Shown here one piece after another: positions 8,901 to 38,193 of a stretch of DNA of 64,000 bases. The number at the start of each line of letters is the position of its first letter. Positions within the stretch are counted from its first letter, which is position 1. The stretch comes from Anolis carolinensis (lineage: Eukaryota): positions 247,400,689 to 247,464,688 of the forward strand of contig NC_085841.1 of NCBI RefSeq assembly GCF_035594765.1, written 5' to 3'. The notes beneath the pieces are model-generated. The model saw nothing but the letters and a program-made list of their open reading frames with translations. It did no database searches and was not told where the DNA came from. Both the position numbers and the translations under genes were made by a program.

Positions 8901-9640
8901 GCTGATTGGAAAATGATGGGTATTCAAGTGCTTTTTGTCACTGTGTGTTCCACATCCAATGACTATCCCTATTTCATTGTACGTCCTGGTACCACTGGAA
9001 TTTTTCAAGTAATTTATCATAAATTGATATGTACCCAGATTCTGCACTAGTCCTTCTAAAAATAAATCTTATCTTGGATATCTCTTTGGCATGTATATTG
9101 TTTTAATACAAATTACTCAAAAATGAGGTTTACATAATATAAAAGCTGCTGGGGGGGGTTCAATGCTTCTTTTCTGTATCTTGCTTTTATAACAATTGTC
9201 TGCAAAAATCTAGGAGGATAATAATTGTTTTGAAAGACCCCCAAATTGGCTAAAGCTTCTTTTACTTGTTTACCTACAGTGGAGCATATGTGATCCCATC
9301 AGGAGAAATTTCTGGCTTTCATCCAATTCTGCCAATTAATATAAATTTGGCAAAGATGTGTAAAAATATGTATAATAAAAAATACAGGTAGATACTGCAG
9401 ATACCCTGCATGTATTAGGCACAATCTGACAGGGAGAAAATTATAGCTGTTAATTTCTAATTCTATTCATTGGGAGGTACAATGATTGAGTCATATGGAT
9501 GAAGACTTGTACATAGACTTAAGTCAAATTAAATGTCTTCTAAATTACTCTAAATTAAATCAACTGACAAATGATACAAACAGAATCATATGTTTTTGGA
9601 ATGAATGTTGACTTTTTATATTACATATAACAATTGACAT

Positions 9641-10122
9641 AACTGCAGCCAGATTGTTAACTGGGGTTAGCTACAGGAGTTGCACAGCTCCCTCCTTGCA
9701 ACAGCTCAAGCGTATCTCACTGCACAAACCTGGCTGGGCTCTGAGATCGTCAGATGCTCTTCTCTCAGTCGCACCACCATCACAAGAGAAGGTCTTCTCC
9801 GTGGGCGCCCCAAAGATCTGGAACTCTTTTTCCAGGAAGACCAGAATGGCCCCCTCGTTGTCCTTCCAGTGGCAGACTAAAACCAATTTATTCTGGCATG
9901 GTTTTAAAACACAAGTTTTTAAGAGGTGCTGCATGATATTAGCTAATTGTTTTTAACCACTTTTATGTATTTATTTTAATATTTTAACTGAATTGTTTTA
10001 ATACTTATGACATGTGTAATTTTGTTTTAATGTGTTATATGTTTTTAATTGTATAGTTTTAAAGTTATGAGTGACTTTGGGTCTCAGTCCTGATGAAAAA
10101 AGCCGAGTACAAGTAATAATAA
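9641..10122 (+). mobile_element. Degraded L2 LINE 3' fragment
   Basis: Translates to AARLLTG...LRSSDALLSV...FSVGAPKIWNS, the L2 ORF2 C-terminal signature, followed by an AT-rich 3'UTR; boundaries approximate. Confidence 0.7.
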
Positions 10123-10914
10123 CATCAACAGCACAGTACAGATTGAATATCAAAAACGTTTCAGAAAATGTTGCTCAGTTTTTCTTTGTTACATTATGTG
10201 TATCTCTAATGGAAGCTGTTCCGGAATAAAAGTGTATTTGACTTACTGTCCAATCAAAGTTTGTCCTGAAAAACAGATCTTTTGATATGGGGAAAATAAA
10301 CTGTACCTGGAGTATAAAGTACTTGTTTGATTAATATGACTCCACATTCAAAGTAGTGTGCTTAGTTTCAGTAGCTAGAATGGTCTTATCTTATAGACTT
10401 CTCCATTGTGCTCCCTCTAGTGTTAAGTTTAACTGCTGTTTTATATGGCAGTGCTTCTTGGGCTCTCTGATATGAGGAACTGGTAATATGTTTTCCTCAG
10501 TGGACCAGAAACTGATACCGTATTTGTGCCAATTGACCCCAGTTCTTTCTTTTGTTCCTGGGAATTCGCTGCAAACTAGTAACCAATGGTTCGGGGATTG
10601 GCCCTAGTTCAAGGACAACCACTGTGGGGAGCACTAATGTAACAGACTGATTTCAAGCAGAAATCAGGGAAGATCTGTGTATACCAGTCAAATTTCATTT
10701 ATTTTGCACATTCTTGGAAACAAGATAGAAATAATTACAAAACCAAATGTGAAATGATGCTCATGATAGTTCTTCAGCAGGTGGTTTTATCTTTTTGTCT
10801 TTTTATGGAGTTTGAAAAAGTACAATTGGAAAATAACCAAGAAATATAGGCATTAAAATAGTATTGGCTTTCTCGGGGTGCCATTAAATTTTTTTTATAA
10901 GAATAAGTACTAGA

Positions 10915-11267
10915 CTTATATACTCAAGTATAAGCCGAGTTTTTTGGCTCCTTTTTAGAGCTGAAAAAGCCCCCCTTGGCTTATAATCGAATGAGAGTTA
11001 TATTCAGGTTGGCTTCTACTCGAGTATATAATCAGTGTTGGATAGTTTTAACTTAAATTACAGTTTTATGTAAATATTCGAAAACATTTAACTTACTGAT
11101 GCCTCAATTAATGTAATTTTATTGGTATCTATTTTTATTTTTTATTTTTGTAATTTACCAGTATCTGCTACACCCTCGTCTTATACTCGACTCAATAAGT
11201 TTTCCCAGTTTTTTGTGGTAGGTGCTGCAGCTTATATTCAGATTGGCTTATACTCGAGCATATACGG
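10915..11267. mobile_element. Tc1/mariner (Tc2-like) MITE
   Basis: Degenerate TIRs TATATACTCAAGTATAAGCCGA ... TGGCTTATACTCGAGCATATACGG|TA. Confidence 0.65.
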
Positions 11268-11497
11268 TAATAACAATTCCAGTAACAGTATTGTTAGGTT
11301 GATAAGGATTTTCTAATTGCCACATTACAGTTTGAGCTCAGTGGCAGGGAAACTAAACTAGTTAAGTAATCTATAGTTAGTTTGGAGTTGTCTCAAGTTA
11401 TGTTTATCCTGTATAGTCAGTTGCTATATGAGCTATATACAACAGCAGGTAGTGAGTTTTTACAAAGCAGTCACTTAGCACTCTGTATGACATCTAT

Positions 11498-11713
11498 GGA
11501 TGCATTTACACTGCAGAATTAATGCAGTTTGACACTACTTTAACTTCTATGGATCAATGCTGTGGAATGATCAGAATTGTAGTTTTGTTAAAGCTTTTTG
11601 CCTTCTTTGCCAAAGAGTGCTGGTGGCTCACGAAACTACAACTTGCATGATCCACAGCATTATGGCAGTTGAAGTGATGTCAAATTGCATGAATTGTGCA
11701 GTGTAGATGTGCT
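11498..11713. mobile_element. Palindromic (fold-back) MITE, GGTGCATCTACACTG-type
   Basis: Long self-complementary arms (TACACTGCAGAATTAATGCAGTTTGACAC... / ...GTCAAATTGCATGAATTGTGCAGTGTAGA); sister copies at 12908 and 56602. Confidence 0.75.
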
Positions 11714-11904
11714 TCCAGAGCAAAGACAAATGATTATCTTGGTCTAGCTGTCAAAGAAGAATGTGTTATATATGTAGTACGTGATTTGGTCCTATAAATC
11801 CTGCAAAACACGTATGTATGCTCATCTTGTCTTGAGAAGTACTGCAATAATCATGTTTGCTGTTTTGGAGAATACACATAATGATTTTTTCCCTTTCTTT
11901 CCAG

Positions 11905-11947
11905 AGGTGGCTGGATCCAAACAAGCCTATCAGGAAACAATTGAAGA
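11905..11947 (+). CDS. PTPN4: PTPN4 exon B RWLDPNKPIRKQLK
   Basis: TTTCCAG acceptor, GTAAGA donor; 43 nt; FERM WL motif. Confidence 0.95.
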
Positions 11948-12043
11948 GTAAGAAAAATATTTTTATTTACAATGAATAGAAATACCTACATATTTTTATT
12001 TTTCTTATATACTGTACTAATGAAGTGTTTTGGTTGATTTTAG

Positions 12044-12122
12044 GAGGATCGCCTCACAGTTTGAACTTCAGAGTCAAATTTTTTGTAAGCGATCCTAATA
12101 AACTTCAAGAAGAATACACACG
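12044..12122 (+). CDS. PTPN4: PTPN4 exon C (R)GSPHSLNFRVKFFVSDPNKLQEEYT(R)
   Basis: TTTTAG acceptor after a 96-nt intron, GTATCA donor; 79 nt. Confidence 0.95.
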
Positions 12123-12907
12123 GTATCAGTTTCTCTCTTATTTTAATATGTCAGCTTGATGTTTTTATTATGTTGTTATATAGTATAGATATACCTTAAT
12201 TAGCAAGTGTGGTGTGTTTCTGGGCTTTACTTTTTTTGCAGAAAATTCAGTTTTAGAACCAGAAATTACTTGAAAAGAATAGAGATAGTATGTACACCAT
12301 GTAAAAAAGAGCAATTTATTCAAAACTTGAAAAAATATGTACGTAAAAGGTAAAAGCCTAACATTCTGAACCTTCTAGAGAACATATGAAAGGCTTAAAT
12401 ATACATCCGGGGACAAGTTTTTTAATTTCACTTACTGATACTGCTGGTTTCCTTATAATTTTCATTTTGATTATGAGCTTTATATATTTATGTTTTTTAA
12501 TTCTTCTTTTAACTGGATATAGCTGGTAAGGCAAGCTTACCTCTGTCTCTTTTGGACTGTTTTATAGTCATGGTTTTATATTCATGGTTTCAGCTGAATA
12601 TAACCTGGTCTTTACTTATCTATCATCCAACTGTTGATGCTACCTTGATTACGGAGGACTAGTTGCTTGAAGACCAGTTCAGATGTTTTCTCAGCCATAG
12701 ATCAGGAGTGCAACAGTTACTTTCTTGTACTATATTGTCAGAGAAAAGAAACCCACTGCCAACCTATTTTATTCTATGCTGTAAGCCATTTTTGCTTAGC
12801 CCTGGTTTGATAGCAGTAAACAAGGCAGCAGGAGGGAAACAAGTTTAACCGGGGAGTATAATGGAATTATACAGCTGGATTTCAGTACTTCTGCCCAAGC
12901 ATCTCAC

Positions 12908-13125
12908 GGTTCTTCTACACTGTGGAATTAATTTAGTTTAACACCACTTTAGCCACCATGGCTCAGTGCTATGGAATCATGGGACTTGTGGTTCACAAGG
13001 TCTATAGCCTTCTTTACCAAAGAGTGATGGCATCTCACCATACTGCAAATCCCAGGATTCCACATCATTGAGGCATGGCAGTTAAAGTGGTGTCAAACTG
13101 CATTAATTCAACAGTATAGATAATC
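12908..13125. mobile_element. Palindromic MITE, same family as 11498-11713
   Basis: Self-complementary arms ACACCACTTTAGCCACCATGGCTCAGTG / CATTGAGGCATGGCAGTTAAAGTGGTGT. Confidence 0.75.
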
Positions 13126-15069
13126 ACTCCGATAGAAAAGGAAGTTCTTTTCTATCGTTCTTTGCAATCAAATGTACAAGTCTGTGTGTAATAAACATGC
13201 AAGCCTCTGACTTGCCTTCAAAATGCAAGTTAATTAATCTAGTGTAAATTAACATGCCAAAAGATCTGCTTCCCTTCTTATACCCAAATGCCTTGCTAAC
13301 TAAAATTTTATTCTTTGCTTAGAGTTATGTTTTAAATCTTAGTAAAGATGTGTAGATGAAAGGTTGTTCTTAGTAAATATTTTCTTTTCTTTCCTTTTTG
13401 GAAAAAGAGTATTGGTGTTTGTAAATCTGTTTTGCTAAAACTGCTTTAACTTCAATTGATTTCCCAGTGCAAGAGTTGTTTGCAACGTATGTTGCAAGCG
13501 GAATGTAGACAAGATCTAATTAATCTTCCTGTGTAGTTGAACACCCGCAGTGTTGCATTCATATCATCTTTTTCTATGCCCCAGAAAAATCTCTCTCAGT
13601 CAGAAATATCTTTCTGATCCATAAATACAAGTAGAAGGGTTTATATTCAGGACAGTTCTTAAATAAATCTGTGCAAATAGCACAATACTATACTTATCAT
13701 TATTATTTTTGGAAGTTATAAATCATTTATAAGAAATAAGAGTTATAATTATTGAGGTATATGATTTGGCTTTTTCTTAAGTGTGTAGTATAGGATTTAA
13801 ACTACACATCAATGCTGATAAGTTTGATCAAGTAGGTGCAGTGGTTCTGGTATTCTAAGTCCAAGTTCCACAAAATATGTTGTATACATGTAAAATAATT
13901 CAGGATAATGCTGATGTTGGGCAACTGATTAATATAGTGGCTTGATCTTTCTATATATTTTGATATCATACTACTTACATAGTGCCTGTTAAGCGGAAAT
14001 ATGTGGACTGGGCCTCACTCCATTCATAGGGAAGGTGCTCTTGCACTCTTTTGATAAGGAACGATTTGACCTTTTTATCATTATGTAACAAAGCTGGGAA
14101 TACAAAGGCCAATCGCTTGCAAGTCACCTCTCTTGGCAAAGAATGGTAAACTGTCATTTCAAACTTCCCTTTGTATAGTAAAGATAACATTCCTTGTCTC
14201 GAGAACAATTTAAATCCCATTCATTCATAATTTTACAGTTCTCACCTTCCATTACATCCCCCTCCAAATAGCTATGCATGCAAAATAATAATGTTTCATT
14301 GATCATAAGGTGGGTTCTTTTTCAACAATATCAACAATATTAGTAACATTAGTTTTAATCTGTCAATGTGAATATAGCTTTCCTATGATGAAAAACTACC
14401 AGCTTTTTCAGGAATGATAATCAAAATCTGATTCCCAAACTACAATTTCTTTAAATTAAAATTTCAGATTTTGCCCCTAACCTGCCCAGTGCCGTATACA
14501 TATTTTTCCTGCTCTTTATTTTATCAACAGTTACAGCCAACTGTCTTTCGTAGGATGCATCCTTCAGTAGAGCTGGCATTCCTCTAATTCTTAGGTGAAA
14601 ATTTCAAACCATTTGAAAATCTTAGGTGAACTTCTGTATGACTGTTTCAGTAAATATTTGGCAAGAGTTTTTAGAAATGCCTTTTAAATTCAAATGTACT
14701 TACCTGACAGTGTTACCATGAATTTTGAAGAGGATATTTTATCACATTATTCTTTACATTAGTATATCTCAGTTGTCAATGCTAATTTTGCATGCAGAAA
14801 TATTAATGATAATTATAAACCTTTGGCCGTAGGATATCCCAATCAGTGTTCATTTGAGAAATGCATACTATTAGTGTGAGGTGGTAGAAAATGACTTATA
14901 AACATACTTCTGAATAGCATCCTCAAATGAGGATTTAAAAATTAAGAGTTTTTAATATGGGTTACTGAAAGTTCCAAAGTAGATTTTCCAGATTCCTATC
15001 TCAAAGTATTTTTGTCAAAAAGTAATACCTAGGTGAGTACCCAGCAGGACCCATCAAGAATACTGATAT

Positions 15070-15246
15070 AGGCAGTCCCCAGGTTATAAACAAAATAAGT
15101 TCTGTAGGTTTGTTCTTCAGTTGAATTTGTATGTAAGATGGAACACATTTTTAAGTGTAACTTCATCTAAACAAACATATATATCACCCCCATTCTTAAC
15201 TATGAATTGTTTGTAATTCGGATGTCTGTAATTCAGGGACTATCAG
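15070..15246. mobile_element. Tigger-like MITE remnant (AGGCAGTCCCC..GTTA ends)
   Basis: Related copies at ~31914-32180 and ~52655-52960; degenerate TIRs. Confidence 0.55.
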
Positions 15247-16356
15247 TACTGTATTCCTTTATAACCAGAGACTTTTAACTCACTATACTCTTTCCTAAAA
15301 GAATTAGTAAACAAGATGACATTAACTTGGTATATTAAGTTAGAGATTTTGGTTTGGATTTACAGAACTACATGTACAACAAGGCTACAGTAATTACTAA
15401 AAATTGATGTAAGAAATATATTAGATTAAATAGTCATAACTAGTATATAAATATAAAAGCCAAAAGTGCACCATTTACTAGTAAAATAGAAGAAAAACAG
15501 CTTTGCTTGTGGATAATTATAGTTAAGCATGTCACCCACTCATCTTTAATTTAGAGTTTAATTAGAGACTTAATTTGTCTTAGAGTAGAAGCAAATATAG
15601 TATGTGTAAAAACACTGCAAAGTGGTACAAAGATTTCACTCCATGAGGTTAAGGCATTTCATATTTCATTGGGGACTTCAGATCGCTTCAGGGAGCCAGT
15701 TAAGGATCTAAACATTCTTGAGTTTGTTTGGAAATTTAACACCTCTTAGTTCCTTCATGCATACAGTACCTAAGATACCTGAGAACATGAAAGCTCTAGA
15801 TTTAATTAACCTACCACTGAAAAGCTTATCTGATTGGAGCCAAATCTGTATAGGTTATTACTACTGAGATTAATATCATTGGGAAAAGGCCACTCGGTAT
15901 ATTTGTAACTTTCTAAAACATAATAAAAAATGCAGTGATGAACTCAAAACAGATGTTACTATAGGCACAGCCAAGGGTTTGCAATTGAAAAATAGATTTT
16001 CTTAGAGAATTCATGATTCCTCCAGTCACATCAGTCTATATTTCAAAATATGCAGAAACCATTGACATTCCCCTTGATTTAGTGTATTAATTTGCTGCAA
16101 GTAAAACCAGTAGCCATACGCATAGATATTGCATTACCTACATTAATAGCAAAGACAACCTGTATGTTTAAAAAAAGTAACAAAATATTGATTGCTTATG
16201 TTACAAGAACTTCAGACTCAGTTTAATTGCTGTGTCTTGCCTATCTGAAATAATGATACATGATGAAATACAACTACTATTAAGTCAAAAGGTTATCTTT
16301 TTGTTAATAAAATTATAATGGTAATTTTGTGAACCCATTCTTTCTCTTTCTTTAAG

Positions 16357-16401
16357 GTACCAATATTTTTTGCAAATTAAACAAGACATTCTAACTGGAA
16401 G
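16357..16401 (+). CDS. PTPN4: PTPN4 exon D YQYFLQIKQDILTG(R)
   Basis: Pyrimidine tract + AAG acceptor, GTAAGA donor; 45 nt. Confidence 0.95.
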
Positions 16402-17444
16402 GTAAGAATTGTTTCCTGTGTAGATAATTGTACAGATATTAAATGATTCAGAATCTTATGTGAACAGCGAGGTGGAAAGCTCTAGTTTGACATTGTGATA
16501 GCAAAATGTATGTGAAAGCTGACTTCGTAAACTGGAAAACTTAAAAGTTTGCTATTGTTACATTTGCAGACCTGGAGTCTCACATTCAATACTTGAGGTT
16601 CTTTGTGCAATCCTGATTGTAGATCAGGAAACTTGTCTCCTCACCAAAGAGGTCTGATCAATCAGCCTGTATGTGAATATATTTGAATTTAGTATGTGGA
16701 TATATTTCAGTTCTTTCATCTTCTTCTCCATTAGGAGAAAGCCAACTTGATTTTGAACACCCATCAATTTTGACAAGAGGTCATTGAAATCAAAATAAAA
16801 TGTGGCCATCATGAGCCTATACCTCATTCTGTGCAATGTAAATCCTCCCTGTTAACATGTCTATAAAACAAACCAGGAAGGATTTGTTTAATGTGTCATC
16901 CAAAGTGTGGGGTACCAGCTTTTCCCAAAAGGACAAGCTGAATGAATGACATGGTAAAACAAATCCTTCTTCACATATTCTATTTTTTGTTTATTAGTTA
17001 ATGTATTTATATACAGTCCCGTACCTTACAATCCAAGGACAACATAAACTAGTTTATGCCAGTTTTGCCAGTTTGAAGAGAATTAAACACTGTGAATTTA
17101 AACAAGCTAAAAACATATTAAACATTTTGACTGGTTAAAACAAGGCTAGTAAAATGAGTCCTTTTCTAAGCCATGAAGCATATGCAGATGTGGATAACAT
17201 CATTTGGGTGCCAGAAGCTTTTGTAAAGAATCATACTTTTACATGGCACTGGAGTGACACCAGGGTAGGATCCAGTCTTGGGTCATTACAGCTGTGAAGG
17301 CCCACTACCATTTATTCCAAGTGGTGAGATATAGAGGAGACCCCCCCACTGAAGAGCTCTGTCTTCAGGCAAGCGTATGTTTTCAAGTCATGTTATCTGG
17401 AAGGAGCAATACAGTCATGAACAATATACATGAATTAGCATGTA

Positions 17445-17897
17445 CAGTAGAATCTCACTTATCCAACATAAATGGGCCGGCAGAATGTTGGATAAACAAA
17501 AATGTTGGATAATAAGGAGAGATTAAGGGAAAGCCTATTAAACGTCAAATTACATTATGATTTTACAAATTAAGCACCAAAACATCATGTTTTACAACAA
17601 ATCAACAGAAAAAGCAGTTCAATACATGGTAATGTTATGTAGTAATTACTGTATTTATGAATTTAGCACCAAAACATCGCAATGTATTGAAAACATTGGC
17701 TACTAACAAATTGACTACAAATAAAGCTACAATTTCATAAAATGAATTTATAGTAACAACACTGTCAGAAGTTAAATCCATAAAATGTTTAGTCCTTACT
17801 ACCTAGAGAAACAGCTGTGGGTCTGGGCGGGAGGCAGACTGTGTTGAATAATCCAGAATGTTGGATAAGTGAAGGTTGGATAAGTGAGATTCTACTG
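17445..17897. mobile_element. Tc1/mariner MITE (long variant)
   Basis: TIR CAGTAGAATCTCACTTATCCAAC at both ends, TA TSD. Confidence 0.9.
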
Positions 17898-18211
17898 TAG
17901 TTTGTTAAAGAAAGACCAGGATATTCTGTAAGTCTTTGTTTTATTGTTCTGTGCAAATACTGTTGGTTGATGTCAAAATATGTGTATTTAAACATTCAGA
18001 AAGCAATTAAAAGTTGTGGTTGTTGTTTTGTTACGACAGGCCTATATGTAAAAATGCAAACATTTCTAAAGGTTAACACTTTTACATATTTGGCTGCCTT
18101 AAAATGACAATTCAGTGTTTTTAATTGTTCATTCAGAATTCTAAGAAATTTGAAAACTATGTGTTGTTAAACATTACTGTGCAAATAATATGTGTATTTT
18201 TGTGTTCATAG

Positions 18212-18264
18212 GTTGTCCTGCCCTTATAATACTGCTGCACTCTTGGCTTCTTATGCTGCTCAGT
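18212..18264 (+). CDS. PTPN4: PTPN4 exon E LSCPYNTAALLASYAAQ(S)
   Basis: CATAG acceptor, GTAAGT donor; 53 nt. Confidence 0.95.
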
Positions 18265-18910
18265 GTAAGTAAATTATTTTATTAGTTCAGTTCTTTTAAA
18301 AAAATATTTTTAGTGTCTGTTATCATTTTTGCCTGCTCCTATGGTTTTCCCAATTTTGTGTTATTTAGTCAACTATATTATGTTATGTAGAACAGATAAG
18401 TTTATAAAAAGCGTTTAAATCACTTAATCTTGCATTTTTGTATGTTTCTCTTTGCTTACACAAGGCCCCTCAAAAAAGCAGGTGTTTCAGAAACTTTCCA
18501 GGCTGTCAGCATACTTTCTATCTTTTTAGAAATACGTAGTAGCTAGGAAAGAAGGAGGAAATTCCCCCCTCCATTTTTGTATATTCTCTCTGGGTTAGAT
18601 ACAGGTGACGCCCAATGGAGGATTGTTCTGCACTTGCCCTTGTGGCTTGTTTCCAGGGCACCCACCCTGCCACTAATGGGTACCTTTGTCAGACACTAGA
18701 CATATGACTAGCCCCATCTCCCAAAAAGCAGAAACAGGCAGCTTGTGGCAAAACATTGGGTTCTGAAGTACTTCAGATATCATATTTCCAGATAAGGGAG
18801 AATCAACCTGCATTGTGCAGAGGAGCATGAAGGGATTTGAAATGTCTAAGCTAGGATAATAGCAGTTGAGAACTCTGATAATACCCAAGTTACCTTTTTT
18901 TAAAACTGCA

Positions 18911-18981
18911 ACAGGGAGCTCTGGCGTGGCCTGGTCTATGAGGTCACAAAGAGTTGAAAGCGACTGAACGAATAAACAGCA
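18911..18981 (+). mobile_element. RTE-clade LINE 3' tip
   Basis: Homologous to 710-780 (ACAGGGAGCTCTGGCGTG..GAGGTCAC..AAGAGT..CGACTGAACGAA). Confidence 0.7.
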
Positions 18982-20200
18982 AAAACCCACCTACCCCTTC
19001 TCTACCAATGTAAATGTCTTTACAATGTCTCACTTTTACAAAACATTTTTGCTTTCCTTCTTTTTTTTCTCCCCCTGATTTTGTTTTTCCTTGGTCAAGG
19101 AAGCAGTCACAATTTTAGAGACTTTTTGGGGTCCCTTAGCCTACTTTCCTTTCATTGATTCTGAGGCAAAATCCTGTACTTTATCGTTAACTATGCCAAT
19201 TGGAATTGAAATAATCATATATTTCCCCATCCAAATACTAACCAGGACTGACTTTCTTAACTTCAAAGATGAAATTTGGTGTTCTTAGGGTATGTAGGCT
19301 ATACTTAGCATGGTATTCAACACAACTTATTTGCTGTGAAGAATATGTTTCCTCTCATTTAAAGAGTTGTCAGTATCAAGCAAATAGGATATTTAATTAG
19401 AGATAAATCACTTGCATTTCAGTCTAAAAATTAATTTAAAAATTGATGCAGAAGCACTATTTTCACTGCTCAAGATTTCTATGACATGTTCTGTAGAGCA
19501 AATGGCTTTGTAAATCCGACTGCAGATTATCCCTTTGCTGCACTTCAGAGAAAGCTCCATTTATACACATGGTGTATTTGCATGTAAATAACTGCTATGG
19601 ATTGCAGACCTGCAAAAACATCTGACACTGTTTTGTTTATGTGACTTTGAAACCTTAATGTGAGAGAACACCCAAGGTCCAAAATAAGACAATATAGTTG
19701 AAGTCACTAAAATATAGAAATTGATGTTATAATTCTATAAAAACCTTTTGTAGTGACTGAAATCAGTAGGGAGGTGATTTCAACTAACTTAAAATGACTC
19801 TTGCATTAAGTACTCTTGTACTCTTTGATGGTACTGTATTCATCAATAGACTTCCATCAGCAAGACTTCAGAATCCAAAAGAACAGGGAGTTGATCTCTG
19901 CTCCACTCTTGTGTATACCTCTAAAAGTGTTTGTTAAAGACTGAGAAACCCTTTCAAGATCATTTTTCTGGCCTTTCAAAGGGATGGAAAGGAAAGGAGA
20001 AGGAGAAGTAAATTCCTAAAATCTGCCTGTGGGATGATGAATTTAGATTTGCATTTCTAGAAACAGTTCAAACCGTTATTAGGTAATTCTGTACAGTTGT
20101 AAAAATATTTGAGGGAATAAATGTTTTGATACTTTGATTCTTATACTTGCAAAGGGTTGAAATGTGGCTGTTAAATACTGTAGCTTCTTTTAACTTTTAG

Positions 20201-22294: not shown

Positions 22295-22383
22295 GATCAA
22301 AGTAACAATGAAATTATGATTGGAGTAATGTCTGGAGGCATATTAATTTATAAGAATAGGGTACGAATTAACACCTTCCCATG
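22295..22383 (+). CDS. PTPN4: PTPN4 exon H DQSNNEIMIGVMSGGILIYKNRVRINTFP(W)
   Basis: TTTGCAG acceptor, GTAAGG donor; 89 nt. Confidence 0.96.
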
Positions 22384-22527
22384 GTAAGGATATTTATAAG
22401 AAAATGGTTTGCATGCTGTATACTTATTTAGTACTGAATTGCATAATAAAAAAGTAAAAAATCAGCTTTAATCAGATACTTTAAAAGTATATTTTTCCAT
22501 TATTGGAAATGGCATATACAATTTGCT

Positions 22528-23297
22528 ATACACACAAACGATTGTCTATGTACAAAGAAAATGTGTCCAAATGACATATATTGTTACAGTTCCCCGTACA
22601 AAGCTCAATTTGGCCGTACCCGACAAAATGAAAAGGAGCAACAGCTCTAACACAAAAGTTATTCAAGTCTGGTATTGGTTCCAAAATAATGATGGAGCAC
22701 CGCTCTCAAAAAAGTCTTCAAAAGTAAAGTCCAAATAAAGTCCCAAGTCTACAGGGGTCCCGGGTATTTTTGACCCTGTTTCAGGGAAAAACCCCTTCTT
22801 CAGGAGTTGTTAAACCCAGCAACAATGAATTTCTATCTAAAACAAAACATAGAGTAACAAGTATTTTACCAGCAGTATTAACAGAAGTAAAGGTAACCCA
22901 TATAACAGTATTATACTTACATAGTGCTAAATGTTTTCACTGAGTGACTCTGCTTGTGGTGATTTCAACTGCGACAATTACTGAGAATTTTTGAGAGCGG
23001 TGCTCCACCATTATTTTCTTCAATCCAGTATACAGCAACACGACCAACCATCTGTTTGGAAGATATTTTCATTGACTGTATCCCTGAAGCCTATATGTAT
23101 TGGAACCAATACCAGACTTGAATAACTTTTGTGTTAGAGCTGTTGCTCCTTTTCATTTTGTCGGGTACGGCCAAATTGAGCTTTGTATGGGGAACTGTAA
23201 CAATATATTTCATTTGGACACATTTTCTTTGTACATAGACAATCGTTTGTGTGTATAGATACTTTACAAGTATTCTGGGACTTTGTATAGTAGTAGT
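22528..23297. mobile_element. Penelope-like (PLE) non-coding remnant with inverted terminal segments
   Basis: 14-bp TSD ATATACAATTTGCT (22514-22527, 23298-23311); 159-bp inverted arms; (TAG)n end; internal hammerhead fold and GT-AG intron on the minus strand. PLE assignment is inferred from this architecture. Confidence 0.7.
22744..22809 (-). ncRNA. Type I hammerhead ribozyme motif
   Basis: Minus strand: CAACUC-CUGAAGA-AGGG GUUUUU CCCU-GAAA-CAGGGUC AAAAAUACCCGG GACCCCUG-UA^GACUUG; complete core with three stems and a GUA cleavage triplet. Confidence 0.75.
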
Positions 23298-24399
23298 ATA
23301 TACAATTTGCTGTCAAACTGAACAAATATACAACATGGCTCCAATAGTATTATTATTCAGAATTTTCAAAGCTTAATTTTTTATGAAATTAGATTAATGC
23401 TGTCCCCTCTGTATATTTATTTATTAAATGTATATGTCAGCTAGGTGTGTGATTATAATGTTGTTGGAATAACAATGAATAGATATAGATATAGATAGAT
23501 TCAAATAATGATGTGCAGAAATCTGCAAATGCAGCAGATCTTTCCCTGCACCATTTCCTGTGGCAGCCCTCAAAACTACTTCTGAATATTGTTGGCTTTT
23601 TCTGAGCCATAGCTGGGTATGAAGGTCATTCAGAAAGCGAAATCAGCAGCCCTCCTTCAAAAAAGACCAGACTTTATGGATCTATCCATTGAATTGATAA
23701 AAGTTCCAACAAAGTAAACACTATGTATTTTAGATAAAACTTCAAAATGGGACCAAGTTTGGAAGCAAGACTAGTCTGTGGCTTCATTGGTTAGGAAATC
23801 AGCTAGGTCTTGGGAACACTGGCCAAGATTCTGTGTATTTTAGCATCATTTAAATATACTCAAGTGTAATTGCACTGGATCCCACAGTTGTGCAACTGAT
23901 TGTATAACAGGCATTATAGTTTTGAGATCTTCCATTGTGCAATTGTCAATTAGCTTCCCACCCACCAGGTTGGAAATGAGAGAGAGGATTCTGTGTGCAC
24001 TGGTGGAATAATTGACTGCAATAGAACAACACCAGGGAAAGTGCAACTGCTTATGCCGTGATTTTATGCTAGAGCGGTGCCGCAACAGGATTCCCAGCAT
24101 TGCAAGTGTTGTTCCCATCACATGGTTCCAAAGGGCCATGTGAAAATATACTGTATACATAGAACAATTTCAGCCTTGTTGTCTTGGTGGCAATGCAAAT
24201 CCCTATCTATCCAGATATTCAAAATGGAGGGAGATTGCTTCAGCAAAGCTTCATGCAGTGTAAGTATCTGCCACAGTAAGAATAAACTCATTGAATCAAT
24301 TGCTGAATTCCCTATCTATTTGCATTTAGGGTTGTGCTAATCATTCAAAGATGGATTGATTACTTATTTTCCAAAATAAAAAACCCTCCAAAATTATCC

Positions 24400-24685: not shown

Positions 24686-24846
24686 ACTATAGAGATGATG
24701 TTATAATAAATGATTAAACACACCAGAAAGAAATTAATACATTGAAATAAACACCTGAAGTGTCAGAAAGATCCTTTCTACATTATTTGAAAGCCAAGGC
24801 ACAACTGAATTTCTCTCTCTGGAAGCTTCCCCTTTACATCTTAGAG

Positions 24847-25738
24847 CAGGGGTCCCCAAACTAAGGCCCGGGGGCCAGATGTGGCCCTCCAAGGTCATTT
24901 GCCTGGCCCCTGTCCTAAATTTTAGACTTAGGGTTGACCTAAGTCTTCCTGGTCTTTGGAGGTCTCTTTGGTTACTTATGGTCTTATGAGATCGTCTAGA
25001 TCAGGGGTCCCCAAACAAAGGCCCGGGGGCCAGATGCGGCCCTCCAAGGTCATTTGCCTGGCCCCTGCCCTCAGTTTTATAATATAATATTTTTATATCA
25101 GCTTTAATAATATAATATTGTACATACATATAATATTGATAGAACTATTATAATGTAATACAATGTAATACTAATAATAATACCATATAATAATATTAAT
25201 TATATATTATATATTACATGTAATATTACTAATAATATTACAATATAGTGGTATAATTCAATATAGTAATATATAATGCTAATATTGTTCTATGTTAATA
25301 ATATAATATATTGTATATAGATATAAATTGTAAGCCGCTCTGAGTCCCCTTCAGGGTGAGAAGGACAGGATATAAATGTAGTAAATAAATAATAAATAAA
25401 TAAATAAATAAATTTTTGACTTAGGCTCACCCAAAATCTGAAATGACTTGAAGGCACACAACAACAATAATTCTAATTAACTTGACTATCTTGTTGGCCA
25501 GAAGCAAGTCCACACTTCCCATTGAAATCCTGATCGGTTTGAGTTGGTTAAAATTGTATTTATTTTTAAATATTGTATTTTTCTTTCATTGTTGTTGTTG
25601 TTTTTGCACTCCAAATAGGACATATGCAGTGTGCATAGGAATTTGTTCATTTTTTTCTTCTTCAAATGATCATTCGGCCCCTCCACAGTCTGAAGGATTG
25701 TGGACCGGCCCTCTGCTTTAAAAGTTTGAGGACCCCAG
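24847..25738. mobile_element. Non-autonomous hAT element with a duplicated left end
   Basis: TIR CAGGGGTCCCCAAACT ... AGTTTGAGGACCCCAG; perfect TSD TCTTAGAG (24839-24846, 25739-25746); second left end at 25002; internal AT-rich tract and L2-type tail. Confidence 0.85.
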
Positions 25739-28700: not shown

Positions 28701-29452
28701 GTCTATTAGCTGTTAGCAGTTTACTAACTCACATTCAAGCCATGGTTGTGAATTTAGACATCTCTTTCCTTTAAACATTTTTTTAAAGTAGTTGCAGTTA
28801 TAAAATTAATCTAAATGGAGTATAATTTTGCTTTTTTTGGTTACTACTATTGGTAAATTCTCCTGATTAGATCATCTCTTTCTACCCCCCCCCCCCCCTC
28901 TTTTTGGCCTTGGTTAAATGTGGCTCTTTGTTTAAGACACAAGTGAGCTCTTGCAAGAAAGTCTTTGCCATTATTCAAAATATTTCTTGTGTTCAAGGTA
29001 GACTTTATACTGGTCATTAGAATATCTGTAGCTGTAGACTGTGATGCCTGCCTCTTTGAGCCACATATGGGATGTGCATGCATCACACAGAATAAAATTG
29101 AAACATGGAACTACACTATAGTTTCACACTTTTCCAATACAGAAGTGTGTGATATGCAGTAGTTGTGCTAGAAGCATCTTCAGTGTGACTCAGATTCAGT
29201 CACATGTTAATTTTTAAAGATGCGGCACCAACGGGATGCTCATGGCTCTTCTATATTTTATGTTTTGTTCCTCATCTTGGGTCAACGTCTCCTTGCTCAC
29301 TTATGTAGCTGCTGAGTTGGAGGAATGGACGTGAGCTTGAATAATTGTTGCTGAAGGAAAGATTGCTAGGAGCTAGCTTTCTTCCCTCCAAGGGCTGATG
29401 AATATATGTGCTTCCAGTAATTCCTTTAAATAGTTTAAACAAACGTCTACAT

Positions 29453-30262
29453 CAGGGGTCCCCAAACTAAGGCCCGGGGGCCACATGCGGCCCATCAAAG
29501 CCATTTATCCGGCCCCCATGGTGCGCCTTCCAAAGCTCTGCTTGTTTATAATGGTATTTTAATTATTATTTAATTAATAATTAATTATTAAAGGTTGCTT
29601 TGGCAGTGCTTTTGGTGCACAAAGGCAAAAGGGGGTTGGACAAAATGGCCCAAGGGTTCTTTTCCAATCCTTATTATTATTTTTATTATATTATTATTAT
29701 TATTATTATTATTGACACAAAGANNNNNNNNNNNNNNNNNNNNNNNNNNNNNNNNNNNNNNNNNNNNNNNNNNNNNNNNNNNNNNNNNNNNNNNNNNNNN
29801 NNNNNNNNNNNNNNNNNNNNNNNNNNNNNNNNNNNNNNNNNNNNNNNNNNNNNNNNNNNNNNNNNNNNNNNNNTCACAACATCACAAGTTGAACACTTTC
29901 CCAGTGTTTAGGACTGTGCGATGTGGATGATGATGATGATGATGATTATTATTATTATTAACATTGAGGCTAGGTGACCATCTGTCAGGGGTGCTTTGCT
30001 TGTGCTTTTGGTGGACAAAGGTAGAAGGGGGTTGGACTCAATGGCCCAAGGGGTCTCTTCCAACCCTTATTATTATTATTATTATCATTGAGGCTGTATT
30101 TGTTCCCATTTGTTTTTTGTTTTTTTTTACTTCACAATAAAAGATGTGCAGTCTGCATTGGAATTTGTTTATAGGGTTGTTTTTTTTCAACTATAGTCCG
30201 GCCCTCCGATGGTCTGAGAGACCATGAACTGGCCCCCTGTTTAAAAAGTTTGGGAACCCCTG
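29453..30262. mobile_element. hAT MITE, inverted sister of 579-1504
   Basis: TIRs CAGGGGTCCCCAAACT / AGTTTGGGAACCCCTG; TSD GTCTACAT / GTCTATAT; same internal modules in reverse order. Confidence 0.88.
29724..29873. other. Assembly gap (150 N)
   Basis: Run of N inside the hAT MITE. Confidence 0.99.
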
Positions 30263-32155: not shown

Positions 32156-34044
32156 GGTTAACACCCCTGTGATGTTTCTTTAAGGATGTTCACAACCTTC
32201 ACATTTAAGATGGAATATGGTATGGTCCATCTTATTCGGCCCAAGGATGTGGACAAGATCTTGGGAGGAATGAGATCAAACACTTGCTTTCTGCATCCTT
32301 GCCTATCCTGGCAAGGGGGACCACTGGCAAAGTGGGTGAAGGTGCTGGTTAATGCCTCCCTGACCTCCAGGGCATAATCTGAATGGGTTGTGCTGGGCCC
32401 CAGGGTATAATGCCAATCAGTTTCAGGGAGGCAGTAGTAAGACCCTTATTTAAAATACAGGTATTGAATCCTTCTCATCTGAGTAACTATCGGCCAGTTA
32501 CAAACCTCCCCTTCCTGGGCAAGGTTCTAGAGAAGGTGGTGGCCTCACAACTCCAAATCTTCTTGGATGAAACCGATTACCTGGATCCATCTCAATCTGG
32601 TTTCAGGCCTGGCCATGGGACAAGACAGCATTGATCGCCTTAGTGGATGATCTACGAAGAGAACTAGACAGAGGGAGTGTGTCCCTGCTAGTTCTCCTGG
32701 ACCTCTCAGCAGCTCTCGATACCATTAATCATGGTATCCTTCTGGGTTGTCCCTCTGGAATGGGACTGGGTGGCACTGTTTTGCAGTGGCTTTGGTCCTT
32801 CCTGGAGGGTCAGACCCAGATGGTGGAGCTGGGGGACTCCTGTTCGACTCCCTGGCTGCTGGCCTGCAGTGTCCCTCAGAGTTCAGTTCTGTCCCCCATG
32901 CTGTTTAACATTTACATGAAACTGCTGGAAGAGATCATCTGGAGTTTTGGAGTTCAGTGTCAAATTTACGTCAATGATACCCAACTCTATTACTCCTTTC
33001 CATCTAAAGCCAAGGATGCTGTCCTGCCCCTTAACCGATGCCTGTCATCAGTGATGGACTGAAGGGTTAATAAGTTGAAGGTAAATCCAGACAAAACAGA
33101 GGTAGTCCTGGTCAGTCATAAGGTGGATCAGGGTGTAGAATTACAACCTGTGCTGGATGAGGTCACACTCCCCCTGAATATGCAGGTTCGCAGTCTGGGG
33201 GTACTTCTAGATTCATTGTTGACCCTGGAACTTCGTGGTGGCCGCCTTTGCACAAATAAAACTTGTGCACCAGCTGCACCCATACCTTGAAACTCCAGAT
33301 CTAGCCATGGTAGTCCATGCCTTGGTTACATCCCATCTGGACTACTGCAATGCTTTCTATGTGGGGCTGCCTTTAAAGGTAGTTCAGAAGCTGTAGTTGG
33401 TTCAGAGATTGGCAGACAGGTTACTTACTAACTGGACTGCTGTACAGGGAGCAGACAACTCCCATGTTATGGCAGTTCCACTGGCTGCCAGTCTGCTTCC
33501 GGGCTAAATACAAAATGCTGGTCAAACTTATCTATATATATAAAAGAGTGATGGCATCACAGCAATTCACAAAACAACAAAAGTACAGGCCCCCCAACCT
33601 CAAAATTTGACAACACAACCCATCATCCACGCCTCACGGTTGATACAACAAAAAGAAAAGAAAAATAAAGTCCTAATTAGAGGGAGAGCAATAATTGTTT
33701 TTATCCAATTGCTGCCAGTTTAGAGGGCTAATCTCTGCCCACTTGGTTGCCTAGCAACCAGCCAAGGGACAGCCAGGTTTCAGTTAGGGGACAGGCAGAT
33801 TTAGGCCTCACTGAGTCTTCTTCCACAGATTATCTAATTTGCACTGGATTATATGGCAGTGTAGACTCAAGGCCCTTCCACACAGCTATATAACCCATTT
33901 ATAATCTTATATTATCTGCTTTGCACTGGATTATCTTGACTCCACACTACCATATAATCCACTTCAGTGTGCACTTTATACAGCTGTGAAGAAGGGGCCT
34001 CAGATAATCCAGTTCTGAGCAGATAATATAAGATTAGAAATATA

Positions 34045-34706
34045 CAGTAGAGTCTCACTTATCCAACGTAAACAGGCCGGCAGGATAAGTGAATATGTTG
34101 GATAATAAGAAGGGATTCAGGAAAAGCCAATTAAACATCAAATTAGGTAATCGTTATACAAATTAAGCACCAAAACATCATATTATACAACAAATTTGAC
34201 AGAAAAAGTACTTCCATGCGCAGTAATGCTATGTAGTATTTACAGTAGAGTCTCACTTATCCAACACTCGCTTATCCAACGTTCTGGATTATCCAAAGCA
34301 TTTTTGTAGTCATTGTTTCAATATATCGTGATATTTTGGTGCTAAATTCATAAATCCAGTAATTTTTACATAGAATTACTGTGTATTGAACGACTTTTTC
34401 TTCCAAATTTGTTGTCTAACATGATGTTTTGGTCCTTAATTTGTGAAATCATAACTTAATTTGATGTTTAATAGGCTTATCCTTAATCCCTCCTTATTAT
34501 CCAACATATTCGCTTATCCAACATTCTGCCGGCCCGTTTATGTTGGATAAGTGAGACTCTACTGTACTGTATTTACAAATTTACCGCTAAAATATCACAA
34601 TGAATTTAAAACACTGACTACAAAAACATTGATTATGAAAAGGCAGACTGCGTTGGATAATCCAGAACATTGTATAAGCGAATGTTGGATAAATGAGATT
34701 CTTCTT
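34045..34706. mobile_element. Tc1/mariner MITE (outer) in Helitron copy 2
   Basis: Left TIR CAGTAGAGTCTCACTTATCCAAC, decayed right TIR; same position as the MITE in Helitron copy 1. Confidence 0.8.
34243..34564. mobile_element. Tc1/mariner MITE (inner), inverted, inserted into a same-family MITE
   Basis: Both TIRs intact; TA duplicated; the outer element resumes at CTGTATTTAC (compare uninterrupted 5221-5235). Confidence 0.88.
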
Positions 34707-35132
34707 TAATATGAAATAATTACTGGGATAGAATAATGCAGAACAATATAATCTCTAAAACCAAGACAGTAAATAAACAGGGGAATTCCACACAGGAAAC
34801 AATCAGGGCCAGCTAACACCTCCCAACAAAGTATTCCCATCCTCAAAGTCTGGCAAATCCTCTGTTTTCTCAGGGCCACAGACAGTAGAAGCACATAAAA
34901 TATTGCAAACAACACCACTCTGAAAACAAGGGAATTCCAGACAGGAAACAATCAGGGCCAGCTAACACCTCCCAACAAAAAATTCACTCAGGGAGGAAAC
35001 AGCCAGGCTTTAAAGCTACAAGGCCATTACATCCTAATCATTTTTCCTAATTGCAGCATTCATACTTGCCTCCAACAAACAAAAAAAACCAATCAGAAAT
35101 ATTGTATATTCACAGCCTTTAGGAAATAATAT

Positions 35133-36439: not shown

Positions 36440-36946
36440 AATTTGGAATAATTTGCTATTATTAGGAAAGCAAAAGCCCTCCTTCCTAGCTTCCTATCTA
36501 GTACGACAGCTTTCAAGACCCTATAAAGTAGCAAACTGCATGGAAATTTGTCTAGATCCATGTCTGTCTTGCACCCCTAAGCAAGGTCCCCATGCCTAGG
36601 TATTTAATTGTTTGAAAGTAGTGTATAGATACCTAAATGCCCTGCATTTCTCCTCCTCAAGAACAACGTGGAAACACTTTAAGGGGTTTTTTTTTGCGTC
36701 AGAAGGCAGCAAGGGTTGAGTGTTACAACACTTTTATCTTGCATGAAGTACACACTTGTGGATCCTGTTGAACAGCAAATAAAGAGTATTGGAAAACTAT
36801 TTGACACTCACAGGCTTGATTGGTCTTTTAGAAAATAAAATATGTATTTGTATTGATAGGTCAAAAATGTGTTGGTAGGTCAAAGATCACACAATATTTA
36901 CTGACCTGTACTAATTATTTGCACTTGCCTGATTGCAGGTATGCAG

Positions 36947-37052
36947 TTTGTCATCCCTTTAAGGATATGATTTTCTTTCTTATAAATGCTTCCAGAACAT
37001 GATTTTGTCATATAAACAGTACCAAAAACAATGCATACAGTCATCAAAGTTT
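36947..37052 (+). repeat. 106-bp exact direct repeat, copy 1
   Basis: Identical to 38194-38299. Confidence 0.95.
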
Positions 37053-38184: not shown

Positions 38185-38193
38185 GTAAGACAT

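What the first reader, a model, noticed from the sequence alone, without database searches (positions are those of the whole stretch)
22744..22809. Complete type I hammerhead ribozyme fold antisense within a PTPN4 intron
Seen: the minus strand reads stem I 5' CAACUC (22809-22804), core CUGAAGA (22803-22797), stem II AGGG/CCCU with loop GUUUUU, core GAAA (22782-22779), stem III ACAGGGUC/GAC(C)CCUGU with a 12-nt loop, cleavage triplet GUA (22752-22750), then stem I 3' GACUUG (5 of 6 pairs, one C-C mismatch). Predicted cut is between 22750 and 22749. A CCCGGG palindrome (22759-22764) overlaps loop III. Known: Penelope-like elements and animal retrozymes carry type I hammerheads, often with palindromic loop III and acting as dimers. 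Inference: this is the self-processing signal of a possibly uncharacterised lizard PLE/retrozyme family. Its long stem III differs from the minimal PLE form. The stem II base pair is A-U rather than the usual G-C (CCCTG may be a decayed CCCCG), so this copy may be weakened. Being antisense, it would not cut PTPN4 pre-mRNA.
Basis: partly seen in the sequence, partly recalled or inferred. Interest (0 to 1): 0.8.

Follow-up and report, generated by a model that had tools for sequence, protein, structure and literature searches.

The report
Penelope-type hammerhead motif in lizard retroelement
The hammerhead-ribozyme-shaped sequence is really there and most likely belongs to a high-copy Penelope-like jumping element that landed in an intron of a FERM-domain phosphatase gene, but this copy looks weak, is unproven as a cutter, and is ordinary for a lizard genome full of such elements.

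Summary
**Observation: confirmed.** The minus strand 22809-22744 carries CUGAAGA, GAAA, GUA and three helices, exactly as described.

**Chance.**
- A loose type I descriptor hits dinucleotide shuffles 0.0062 times per 64-kb window. That is rare per window.
- By my multiplication it still gives about 190 hits per 2-Gb genome.

**Against an active ribozyme.**
- No Rfam hammerhead model scores, even at E<=10 on 106 nt.
- The hammerhead fold is 4-12 kcal/mol worse than a competing hairpin.
- Stem I has a C-C mismatch.
- 10.1-11.1 is not G-C.

- The motif lies in a 770-bp insertion (22528-23297) with a 14-bp target duplication.
- The insertion is two 5'-truncated copies joined head to head, with a 39-nt tail at one end only. 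This is the published insertion signature of Penelope-like elements.
- The motif is on the sense strand of the inverted copy.
- Read with a bulged A after A9, a hallmark of Penelope hammerheads, helix II closes with a G-U wobble. Rare, more diverged copies have G-C there.
- The family is high-copy.

**Not supported:** retrozyme, and any effect on the host pre-mRNA.

**Verdict:** probably a genuine Penelope-type hammerhead motif with an unusually long helix III (about 0.6). Activity is unshown.

The scan had already noted this insertion (s1-528502) and many Penelope hammerheads elsewhere in this genome.

The parts
22744..22809 (-). Hammerhead-like motif (type I topology). Stem I: 22809-22804 with 22749-22744. 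Core CUGAAGA: 22803-22797. Helix II: 22796-22783. GAAA: 22782-22779. Helix III: 22779-22751. A17: 22750. Predicted cut between 22750 and 22749.
   Evidence: Chance rate 0.0062 per window. No Rfam hit.
22783..22796 (-). Helix II, with two possible registers. One is A10.1-U11.1 (4-5 bp). The other is the Penelope register: bulged A22796, then G10.1(22795)-U11.1(22783) wobble plus 3 G-C pairs and a U5 loop.
   Evidence: Rare, more diverged copies have 22783 A>G, which is C11.1 (table 3 and loose end at 22786).
22528..22987 (-). Left copy of the retroelement, inverted and 5'-truncated. Its sense strand is the minus strand and its 3' end lies at 22528, with no tail. It contains the motif 31 nt upstream of the arm 22712-22526. 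It lacks an 82-nt block that the right copy has.
   Evidence: Inverted repeats I1/I2. Contigs join 22683-22836 in other copies (table 8).
22988..23258 (+). Right copy, more deeply 5'-truncated. The arm is 99% identical to the left arm over 159 nt. It has an extra 82 nt at 23018-23099.
23259..23297 (+). 39-nt tail, present only at the right end and ending in TAGTAGTAGT. Many family copies share it.
   Evidence: highest word depth in bin 23250-23289; high-depth contigs span 23212-23281; the unique flank contig starts at 23265.
22514..22527 (.). Target-site duplication, left copy (ATATACAATTTGCT).
   Evidence: D6: 14 of 14 identical to 23298-23311.
23298..23311 (.). Target-site duplication, right copy.
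   Evidence: D6.
22474..22490 (+). 17-mer in the target DNA, 16 of 17 identical to the junction of right arm and tail (23257-23273). It lies 24 nt upstream of the duplicated target.
   Evidence: D3.
22295..22384 (+). Host-gene exon (FERM C-terminal domain). This makes the host gene + strand and the motif antisense to it. The insertion starts about 130-140 nt downstream of its end.
   Evidence: Pfam FERM_C, E 1.7e-6.

Best explanation
The 66-nt motif is the hammerhead motif of a high-copy, non-coding Penelope-like (PLE-mobilised) retroelement family.

**How the insertion arose (inferred).** The 770-bp insertion was made by target-primed reverse transcription from both DNA strands. That gives two 5'-truncated copies whose 3' ends point outward. 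One copy started at the inner RT start site and has no tail. The other started 39 nt further on and has the tail.

**Where the motif sits.** It is on the sense strand of the longer, inverted copy, upstream of the shared 3' arm. PLE hammerheads normally sit in the pseudo-LTR.

**Architecture.** It is a PLE minimal hammerhead: CUGANGA, one extra nucleotide, a helix II that starts with G, then GAAAC...GUH. A 31-nt hairpin is inserted between C15.2 and G16.2, which gives a stable 8-bp helix III.

**State of this copy.** A CpG-type C-to-U change has turned G10.1-C11.1 into G-U. Stem I carries a C-C mismatch. A competing hairpin sequesters stem I and helix II. It is therefore probably a weak or inactive cutter on its own.

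**If it did work.** If transcribed on the minus strand and active, it would cut after A22750.

**Shown:** the motif, the insertion anatomy, high copy number, the variants among copies, and the antisense orientation to the host gene.

**Inferred:** PLE mobilisation, homology to PLE hammerheads, and any cleavage.
For: **Insertion anatomy**
- 14-bp TSD. Arms 99% identical over 159 nt plus a further 30-nt block. A 39-nt one-sided tail.
- It also matches the biochemistry of the green anole element PAc (PMC11167929): two adjacent RT start sites define the tail, both target strands are cleaved and extended, and targets are AT-rich.
- Other copies have head-to-head joints at different points (22591/23229, 22602/22974, 22657/22742, 22692/23009, table 5). 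This is expected if each insertion makes its own junction.

**Family**
- It is high-copy.

**Motif features that match PLE hammerheads** (PMC4209133)
- Helix II starts with G.
- C15.2-G16.2 is retained.
- There is a palindrome in loop III.
- Rare, more diverged copies have C11.1 (22783 A>G).
- The stem I and core segment resembles the Poseidon_Ac junction by eye: ACAACCU-CUGAGGA-U-G there, ACAACUC-CUGAAGA-A-G here.

**Variation among copies**
- All eight variant sites listed inside the motif fall in loop II, loop III, or the bulge and distal end of helix III, or else change U11.1 to C. None hits the 13 core nucleotides or the proximal helices (tables 3-4).

**Chance and priors**
- By multiplication, a chance motif on the sense strand of a given 770-nt element has probability about 4e-5.
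- All PLEs examined are reported to carry hammerheads (PMC6155905).
Against: - No Rfam hammerhead family matches at the gathering threshold, nor at E<=10 in 601 nt or 106 nt.
- The hammerhead fold scores -11.5 to -13.1 kcal/mol against an MFE of -17.0. With 10-nt flanks it is -13.9 against -26.2. In the ensemble, stem I pairs have about 1% probability and helix II about 7%. The folding z-score is -0.34.
- G10.1-C11.1, called highly conserved in PLE hammerheads, is absent from about 99% of the family's word depth.
- Stem I carries a C-C mismatch that no listed variant (5% or more) removes.
- There are no recognisable loop-loop contacts.
- Metazoan PLE hammerheads are described as minimal, without a long helix III.
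- No RT or GIY-YIG ORF was found for this family. The sequence upstream of 22974 in other copies has stops in all frames in the 30 letters visible (table 7).
- No compensatory pair changes were seen. The variant list is truncated (14+1 rows not shown), not independent, and biased by a homopolymer in loop II.
- Some copies lack the motif or helix II (joint 22711/22817; loose end at 22772).
Confidence: 0.6

Rival explanations
1. Chance look-alike. The ancestral sequence of this repeat family happened to contain CUGAAGA, GAAA and UA at the right spacings inside an imperfect hairpin. It was then copied hundreds of times, and it has never acted as a ribozyme.
For: - The loose descriptor hits random sequence 0.0062 times per window. 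By multiplication that is about 190 per 2-Gb genome and about 2.7 across the windows of this genome already read.
- There is no Rfam hit.
- The region prefers a different hairpin by 4-12 kcal/mol, and the z-score is -0.34.
- 10.1-11.1 is non-canonical and stem I is mismatched.
- The family is young, so the conserved core among copies may only reflect recent copying.
- No covariation was seen.
Against: - The motif sits on the sense strand of an element that independently shows the PLE insertion signature.
- Its details fit the PLE hammerhead architecture beyond what my descriptor demanded: the extra nucleotide after A9, G at 10.1, GAAAC...GU, and C11.1 in more diverged copies.
- Only 2 of 21 chance hits had a helix III this long.
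- The listed variants avoid the core and the proximal helices.
Confidence: 0.3
2. A MITE-like DNA transposon with long terminal inverted repeats. The motif is an irrelevant internal sequence.
For: - The inverted arms are 159 nt at 99% identity, plus a further 30-nt block.
- There is no ORF.
- Many copies differ in their internal breakpoints, as deletion derivatives do.
Against: - The ends are asymmetric. A 39-nt family-shared tail lies outside the right arm only.
- From general knowledge, the 14-bp perfect TSD is longer than in any cut-and-paste superfamily.
- Other copies have variable head-to-head joints (table 5).
Confidence: 0.06
3. An animal retrozyme: a non-autonomous element whose paired hammerheads release a circular RNA.
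For: - The motif has type I topology and sits in a non-coding repeat.
- The genome carries many hammerhead-bearing repeats, according to unchecked scan notes.
Against: - The element has only one motif, and the window has no second one.
- The repeats are inverted, not direct.
- There is no tandem array and no circular-junction evidence.
Confidence: 0.03

Closest known systems
Minimal hammerheads of metazoan Penelope-like elements (Cervera and de la Pena 2014, PMC4209133), including the Poseidon_Ac/PAc hammerhead of the green anole (PMC11167929)
   Same: - Type I topology and the CUGANGA core.
- One extra nucleotide between A9 and 10.1, and a helix II that starts with G.
- GAAAC...GUH, with a weak stem I.
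- Sense-strand location in the repeated 3'/pLTR part of an element that inserts with tails and inverted copies.
- The stem I and core segment resembles the Poseidon_Ac junction.
   Different: - Helix III is an 8-bp hairpin with a 12-nt loop, not absent or 1-2 bp.
- Helix II is 4 bp, not about 6.
- 11.1 is U in nearly all copies.
- The motif lies about 220-300 nt from the copy's 3' end, against about 90 nt in PAc.
- No ORF starts inside it.
- The arms show no sequence similarity to Poseidon_Ac by eye.
Type I hammerheads with a large helix III in fungal and protist PLEs (e.g. Serpula lacrymans; PMC4209133)
   Same: A PLE-borne type I hammerhead with a long, stable helix III and no recognisable helix I/II tertiary contacts. 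It can in principle work as a monomer.
   Different: Those come from endonuclease-deficient, telomere-associated PLEs of fungi and protists, and were shown to cleave. This one is in a vertebrate, is untested, and has a non-canonical 10.1-11.1 pair.
Sm-alpha SINE-like retroposon hammerhead of Schistosoma (Rfam Hammerhead_1, RF00163)
   Same: A type I hammerhead carried by a short, non-coding, high-copy retroposon.
   Different: Sm-alpha has G10.1-C11.1 and conserved loop contacts. Here RF00163 gives no match.
Conserved intronic hammerheads of amniotes (HH9 and HH10, in RECK, CTCL and DTNB introns)
   Same: Located in an intron of a vertebrate gene.
   Different: Those are ancient, conserved at the orthologous locus, and described as candidates for a role in host mRNA biogenesis (PMC6155905). 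This one is a young insertion with a perfect TSD, is antisense to the host gene, and matches neither RF02275 nor RF02277.

Membership tests
Hammerhead ribozyme, canonical type I (Rfam RF00163) | Conserved core C3-U4-G5-A6-N7-G8-A9, G12-A13-A14, the A15.1-U16.1 pair, and H17 | tested here: met
   CUGAAGA at 22803-22797, GAAA at 22782-22779, U22751, A22750.
Hammerhead ribozyme, canonical type I (Rfam RF00163) | Three helices around the core, with helix I open (type I) | tested here: met
   Helix I pairs at 5 of 6 positions, helix II has 4-5 bp, helix III has 6+2 bp with a bulge. However, stem I pair probability in the ensemble is only about 1%.
Hammerhead ribozyme, canonical type I (Rfam RF00163) | G10.1-C11.1 closing pair of helix II | tested here: not met
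   The pair is A-U, or G-U with a bulged A. C11.1 occurs only in rare, more diverged copies.
Hammerhead ribozyme, canonical type I (Rfam RF00163) | Covariance-model score at or above the family threshold | tested here: not met
   No hammerhead family is listed at the gathering threshold, or at E<=10 in 601 nt or 106 nt.
Hammerhead ribozyme, canonical type I (Rfam RF00163) | Mg2+-dependent self-cleavage 3' of position 17 | not testable with these tools
   All laid runs are contigs, which cannot show RNA ends (table 6: none).
Penelope-like element minimal hammerhead (Cervera and de la Pena 2014) | [quoted passage not shown] | tested here: met
   A22796 can be bulged, leaving GGGG/CCCU. The feature is listed in PMC4209133.
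Penelope-like element minimal hammerhead (Cervera and de la Pena 2014) | Helix III absent or 1-2 bp, with palindromic 15.2-16.2 or loop 3 (dimeric action) | tested here: not met
   Helix III is 8 bp with a 12-nt loop. C15.2-G16.2 is kept, and a CCCGGG palindrome lies at the edge of the loop.
Penelope-like element minimal hammerhead (Cervera and de la Pena 2014) | Consensus families full of covariation and compensatory changes | tested here: inconclusive
   Only summary variant tables were available. The listed variants avoid the core and helices, but none is compensatory.
Penelope-like retroelement insertion | An inverted or tandem 5'-truncated partner copy forming pseudo-LTR-like repeats | tested here: met
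   Head-to-head copies 22528-22987 and 22988-23297. Other copies have variable joints. The criterion comes from PMC8557442.
Penelope-like retroelement insertion | A 30-40-bp tail, often at one end only | tested here: met
   The 39-nt extension 23259-23297 is at the right end only and is shared by many copies.
Penelope-like retroelement insertion | An ORF with PLE reverse transcriptase and GIY-YIG endonuclease (in the element or an autonomous partner) | tested here: not met
   There is no ORF of 70 aa or more across the insertion apart from a 71-aa frame in the left arm. Longer family members exist beyond 22974, but their sequence could not be fetched. The partner is unknown.
Retrozyme | Direct terminal repeats, each with a hammerhead, or tandem units that release a circular RNA | tested here: not met
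   There is a single motif, the repeats are inverted, and there is no tandem array.

The most novel reading that the evidence does not exclude
A vertebrate Penelope-like family has turned the usual dimer-dependent minimal hammerhead into a self-contained monomeric ribozyme. It did so by inserting a stable 8-bp helix III hairpin between C15.2 and G16.2. So far, that form has been described only for fungal and protist PLEs. Comparing subfamilies with G-C and with G-U at 10.1-11.1 would give a natural series for testing what the ribozyme does in the PLE life cycle.
Probability: 0.2. Interest if true: 0.5.

Novelty: new member of a known kind. Interest (0 to 1): 0.3.

Why it matters
Hammerheads in Penelope-like elements are known, including in the green anole, but their role is unclear. 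The PAc study found cleavage to be protein-assisted and dispensable for insertion in vitro.

A lizard family with a long helix III would be a handy natural variant. It could show whether monomeric cleavage matters for these elements.

For the host gene it matters little. The motif is antisense and cannot cut the pre-mRNA. The more relevant host effect is the 160-190-bp inverted repeat about 130-140 nt from a splice donor, which is a separate note of the scan.

Tried and rejected
- **Rfam:** searched at the gathering threshold on the whole window, and at E<=10 on 601 nt and 106 nt. No hammerhead family appeared. The low-scoring hits to other families are noise.
- **My first reading, a MITE with long TIRs:** abandoned after the asymmetric tail, the 14-bp TSD and the variable head-to-head joints came to light.
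- **Other family copies in the window:** none found.
- **Earlier scan notes by sequence:** blank.
- **Metagenome scans:**
  - A pattern for the motif gave 0 hits.
  - A 21-mer next to the motif gave one contig, L001. It shares only that 22-mer and a microsatellite with the window, so it is unrelated. I did not pursue it.
- **Kinetic data for A-U or G-U at 10.1-11.1:** not found in the papers I opened. One of them does report compensatory changes at 10.1-11.1 in cricket satellite hammerheads.
- **Comparison with Poseidon_Ac:** No script or alignment was run on it.
- The zero depth at 22330-22489 in all four runs may be its silent human-like filter acting on the contig that holds the conserved exon.
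- **N stretches:** the 299 N in the window were left alone.

Full report
**1. Is it there?**

Yes. In order it has:
- CAACUC;
- CUGAAGA;
- AGGG, a loop, CCCU;
- GAAA;
- a helix III of 6 bp, a bulged C, then 2 more bp, closed by a 12-nt loop;
- U-A;
- GACUUG.

A descriptor scan that I wrote finds exactly this one hit on both strands of the window. The descriptor asks for a 6-bp stem I with at most one mismatch, CUGANGA, a helix II of at least 4 bp, GAAA, a helix III of at least 4 bp closed by A15.1-U16.1, and H17. A looser scan for core plus helix II plus GAAA also finds only this site.

**2. Is it more than chance?**

- For one window, yes. There were 0 hits in 400 dinucleotide shuffles and 21 in 3379, or 0.0062 per window.
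- For a genome scan, not by itself. Simple multiplication gives about 2.7 chance hits over the 428 windows of this genome already read (count), and about 190 over a 2-Gb genome.
- Among the 21 chance hits, 2 had a helix III as long as this one, 1 had a perfect stem I, and none had G10.1-C11.1.

**3. Direct tests of the ribozyme reading are negative or neutral.**

- No Rfam hammerhead family (types I, II, III, HH9, HH10) appears at the gathering threshold. None appears at E<=10 when only 601 nt or 106 nt are searched.
- The isolated 66-mer prefers a hairpin that pairs AACUCCU with AGGGGUU. That hairpin scores -17.0 kcal/mol, against -11.5 to -13.1 for the hammerhead in any register.
- With 10-nt flanks the gap widens to -26.2 against -13.9.
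- In the ensemble, stem I pairs have about 1% probability and helix II about 7%.
- The folding z-score is -0.34.
- Rfam's models are built on canonical hammerheads. From general knowledge, I expect them to miss the minimal Penelope forms. I therefore weigh the Rfam result as moderate evidence, not decisive.

**4. What surrounds the motif changes the picture.**

The motif lies inside a 770-bp insertion, 22528-23297.
- It is flanked by a perfect 14-bp duplication, ATATACAATTTGCT, at 22514-22527 and 23298-23311.
- The insertion is two copies of one sequence, joined head to head.
- The arms 22526-22684 and 23100-23258 are 99% complementary. A further 30-nt block (22683-22712 / 22988-23017) is 97% complementary. 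An 82-nt block is present only on the right.
- The right end carries 39 more nucleotides (23259-23297, ending TAGTAGTAGT) that the left end lacks.

I first took this for a MITE.

**5. Reads show a large family.**

I laid Logan contigs of four runs on 22330-23529 at 80% likeness.
- About 500 contigs per DNA run lie on the element.
- Summed word depth is 3,000-20,000, against 8-17 in the right flank. The tool warns that this is not a copy number, so I read it only as high-copy.
- The tail is family sequence. Its bin has the highest depth, high-depth contigs span 23212-23281, and the single-copy flank contig begins at 23265.
- Other copies have head-to-head joints at other points (22591/23229, 22602/22974, 22657/22742, 22692/23009).
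- Many copies continue past 22974 into sequence that this copy lacks. Both copies here are therefore 5'-truncated versions of a longer unit whose 3' ends face outward.

**6. This anatomy is the published signature of Penelope-like elements.**

- Craig et al. 2021 (PMC8557442) describe heavy 5' truncation, an inverted 5'-truncated copy adjacent to the main one, and a 30-40-bp tail often at one end only. They say these features are not seen in TPRT of non-LTR elements.
- The green anole PAc study (PMC11167929) shows that the PLE protein cleaves and extends both target strands. It also shows that reverse transcription starts at two adjacent sites whose spacing is the tail, and that targets are AT-rich.
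- Here one copy would have started at the inner site (no tail) and the other at the outer site (39-nt tail), at an AT-rich target.
- A further detail fits. The target DNA holds a 17-mer (22474-22490) that is 16 of 17 identical to the arm-tail junction (23257-23273), 24 nt before the duplicated target. The PAc paper recalls that the Drosophila Penelope endonuclease needs the tail sequence for recognition. I treat this as suggestive only.

**7. Orientation.**

The 3' ends face outward, so the left copy's sense strand is the minus strand. The motif is therefore sense to its element, 31 nt upstream of the shared arm. It is antisense only to the host gene.

The host gene is on the + strand. The ORF ending at about 22384 matches Pfam FERM_C (E 1.7e-6). 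That fits a FERM-domain tyrosine phosphatase. I did not test the name PTPN4.

**8. The motif compared with Penelope hammerheads.**

Cervera and de la Pena (PMC4209133) list four hallmarks that make chance unlikely:
- a highly conserved G10.1-C11.1 pair;
- palindromic 15.2-16.2 or loop 3;
- families rich in covariation.

Here the fit is partial.
- A22796 can be the extra nucleotide. Helix II then reads GGGG/CCCU, with a G10.1-U11.1 wobble and a U5 loop.
- The U sits where a CpG would be. A minority of more diverged copies do have G at 22783 on the + strand, which is C11.1 and a G-C pair (table 3, and the loose end at 22786). The change must have happened in a master copy, because about 99% of the depth carries the U.
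- After GAAA the motif reads C ... G-U-A. That is the minimal GAAAC-GUH with a 31-nt hairpin inserted.
- The Poseidon_Ac junction, read from the paper's supplement, has ACAACCU-CUGAGGA-U-G. This element has ACAACUC-CUGAAGA-A-G. This is a comparison by eye of short stretches and nothing more.
- The clear difference is the long helix III. Metazoan PLE hammerheads are described as minimal. Long helix III forms are reported for fungal and protist PLEs.

**9. Variation among copies.**

The listed variants inside 22744-22809 are:

| Site | Change | Position in the motif |
|---|---|---|
| 22787 | A>G | loop II |
| 22791 | A>T | loop II |
| after 22785 | GA inserted | lengthens loop II; leaves CCCU before GAAA |
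| 22761 | C>T | loop III |
| after 22772 | T inserted | distal end of helix III |
| after 22757 | T inserted | bulge of helix III |
| 22783, with GG after 22782 | A>G | gives C11.1 |

- None hits the 13 core nucleotides or the proximal helices.
- If sites were uniform and independent, at least 7 of 8 falling in the roughly 24 free positions of 66 would have p of about 0.004 (my arithmetic).
- They are not independent, however. Several sit together on one diverged contig. Loop II is an A5 homopolymer. The tables omit 15 weaker rows.
- No change is compensatory.
- Some copies lack the motif altogether (joint 22711/22817), or lack helix II (loose end at 22772).
- I count this as weak support.

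**10. Weighing the evidence.**

- If the element is PLE-mobilised (I put this at about 0.75-0.8), a hammerhead on its sense strand is expected, since all PLEs examined have one (PMC6155905). A chance motif on a given 770-nt strand then has probability about 4e-5.
- If it is not PLE-mobilised, chance is the better reading.
- Overall I put about 0.6 on a genuine PLE-type hammerhead motif.
- About 0.3 goes to a chance look-alike carried by a repeat. Small shares go to the DNA-transposon and retrozyme readings.
- Whether this copy cuts is a separate matter. Given the G-U or A-U closing pair, the stem I mismatch and the strong competing fold, I would expect weak or no activity without help. Even the PAc hammerhead needed protein in vitro, and no RNA ends were seen at its site.

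**11. Novelty and interest.**

Hammerheads in lizard Penelope-like elements are published and abundant. The scan has many notes of them in this genome. This would be one more family, notable only for the extended helix III. It cannot affect the host pre-mRNA. Interest is low to moderate.

**12. Limits.**

- Only contig summaries of other copies were available, so no alignment, tree or covariation test could be made.
- The RNA status of runs X17 and X20 is a guess.
- No autonomous partner was identified.
- Activity is untested.

Noticed in passing
window 22474-22490 versus 23257-23273: The target DNA just upstream of the insertion holds a 17-mer that is 16 of 17 identical to the junction of the right arm and the element's tail. 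It lies at the same distance (40-41 nt) from the duplicated target on both sides. It could be a recognition site for a tail-binding endonuclease, or the remnant of an older tail. It remains unexplained.
   Followed up: partly
window 22923, 22929, 22943 (+ strand), run X17: A>G differences are seen only in X17, a run guessed to be RNA. Three to four contigs show them at each place, at about 15-17% of depth. X17 has 15 A>G places overall, against 4-6 in the DNA runs. This looks like A-to-I editing of transcripts that contain this inverted-repeat family.
   Followed up: no
window 22526-22712 and 22988-23258: The inverted arms would form a 160-190-bp double-stranded hairpin in the host pre-mRNA, about 130-140 nt downstream of the FERM exon's end. 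This might affect splicing or editing. The scan already holds a separate note on it (s1-528502).
   Followed up: no
window 36944-37052 and 38191-38299: Two 109-nt direct repeats, 99% identical, lie 1247 nt apart. They may be a young element with direct terminal repeats or a local duplication.
   Followed up: no
window 5015-5423, 17440-17904, 34040-34780, 43151-43671, 51682-51947: Five copies, in both orientations, of another interspersed repeat of a few hundred nt, at 63-92% identity. It was not identified.
   Followed up: no
window 24842-24924, 24997-25079, 29448-29530: Three copies of an 83-nt GC-rich repeat unit that begins CAGGGGTCCCCAAAC. Two of them sit 155 nt apart.
   Followed up: no
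L001:115-136: A metagenome contig shares an exact 22-mer with 22723-22744 and nothing else apart from a microsatellite. I take this for a chance match in a very large collection.
   Followed up: yes
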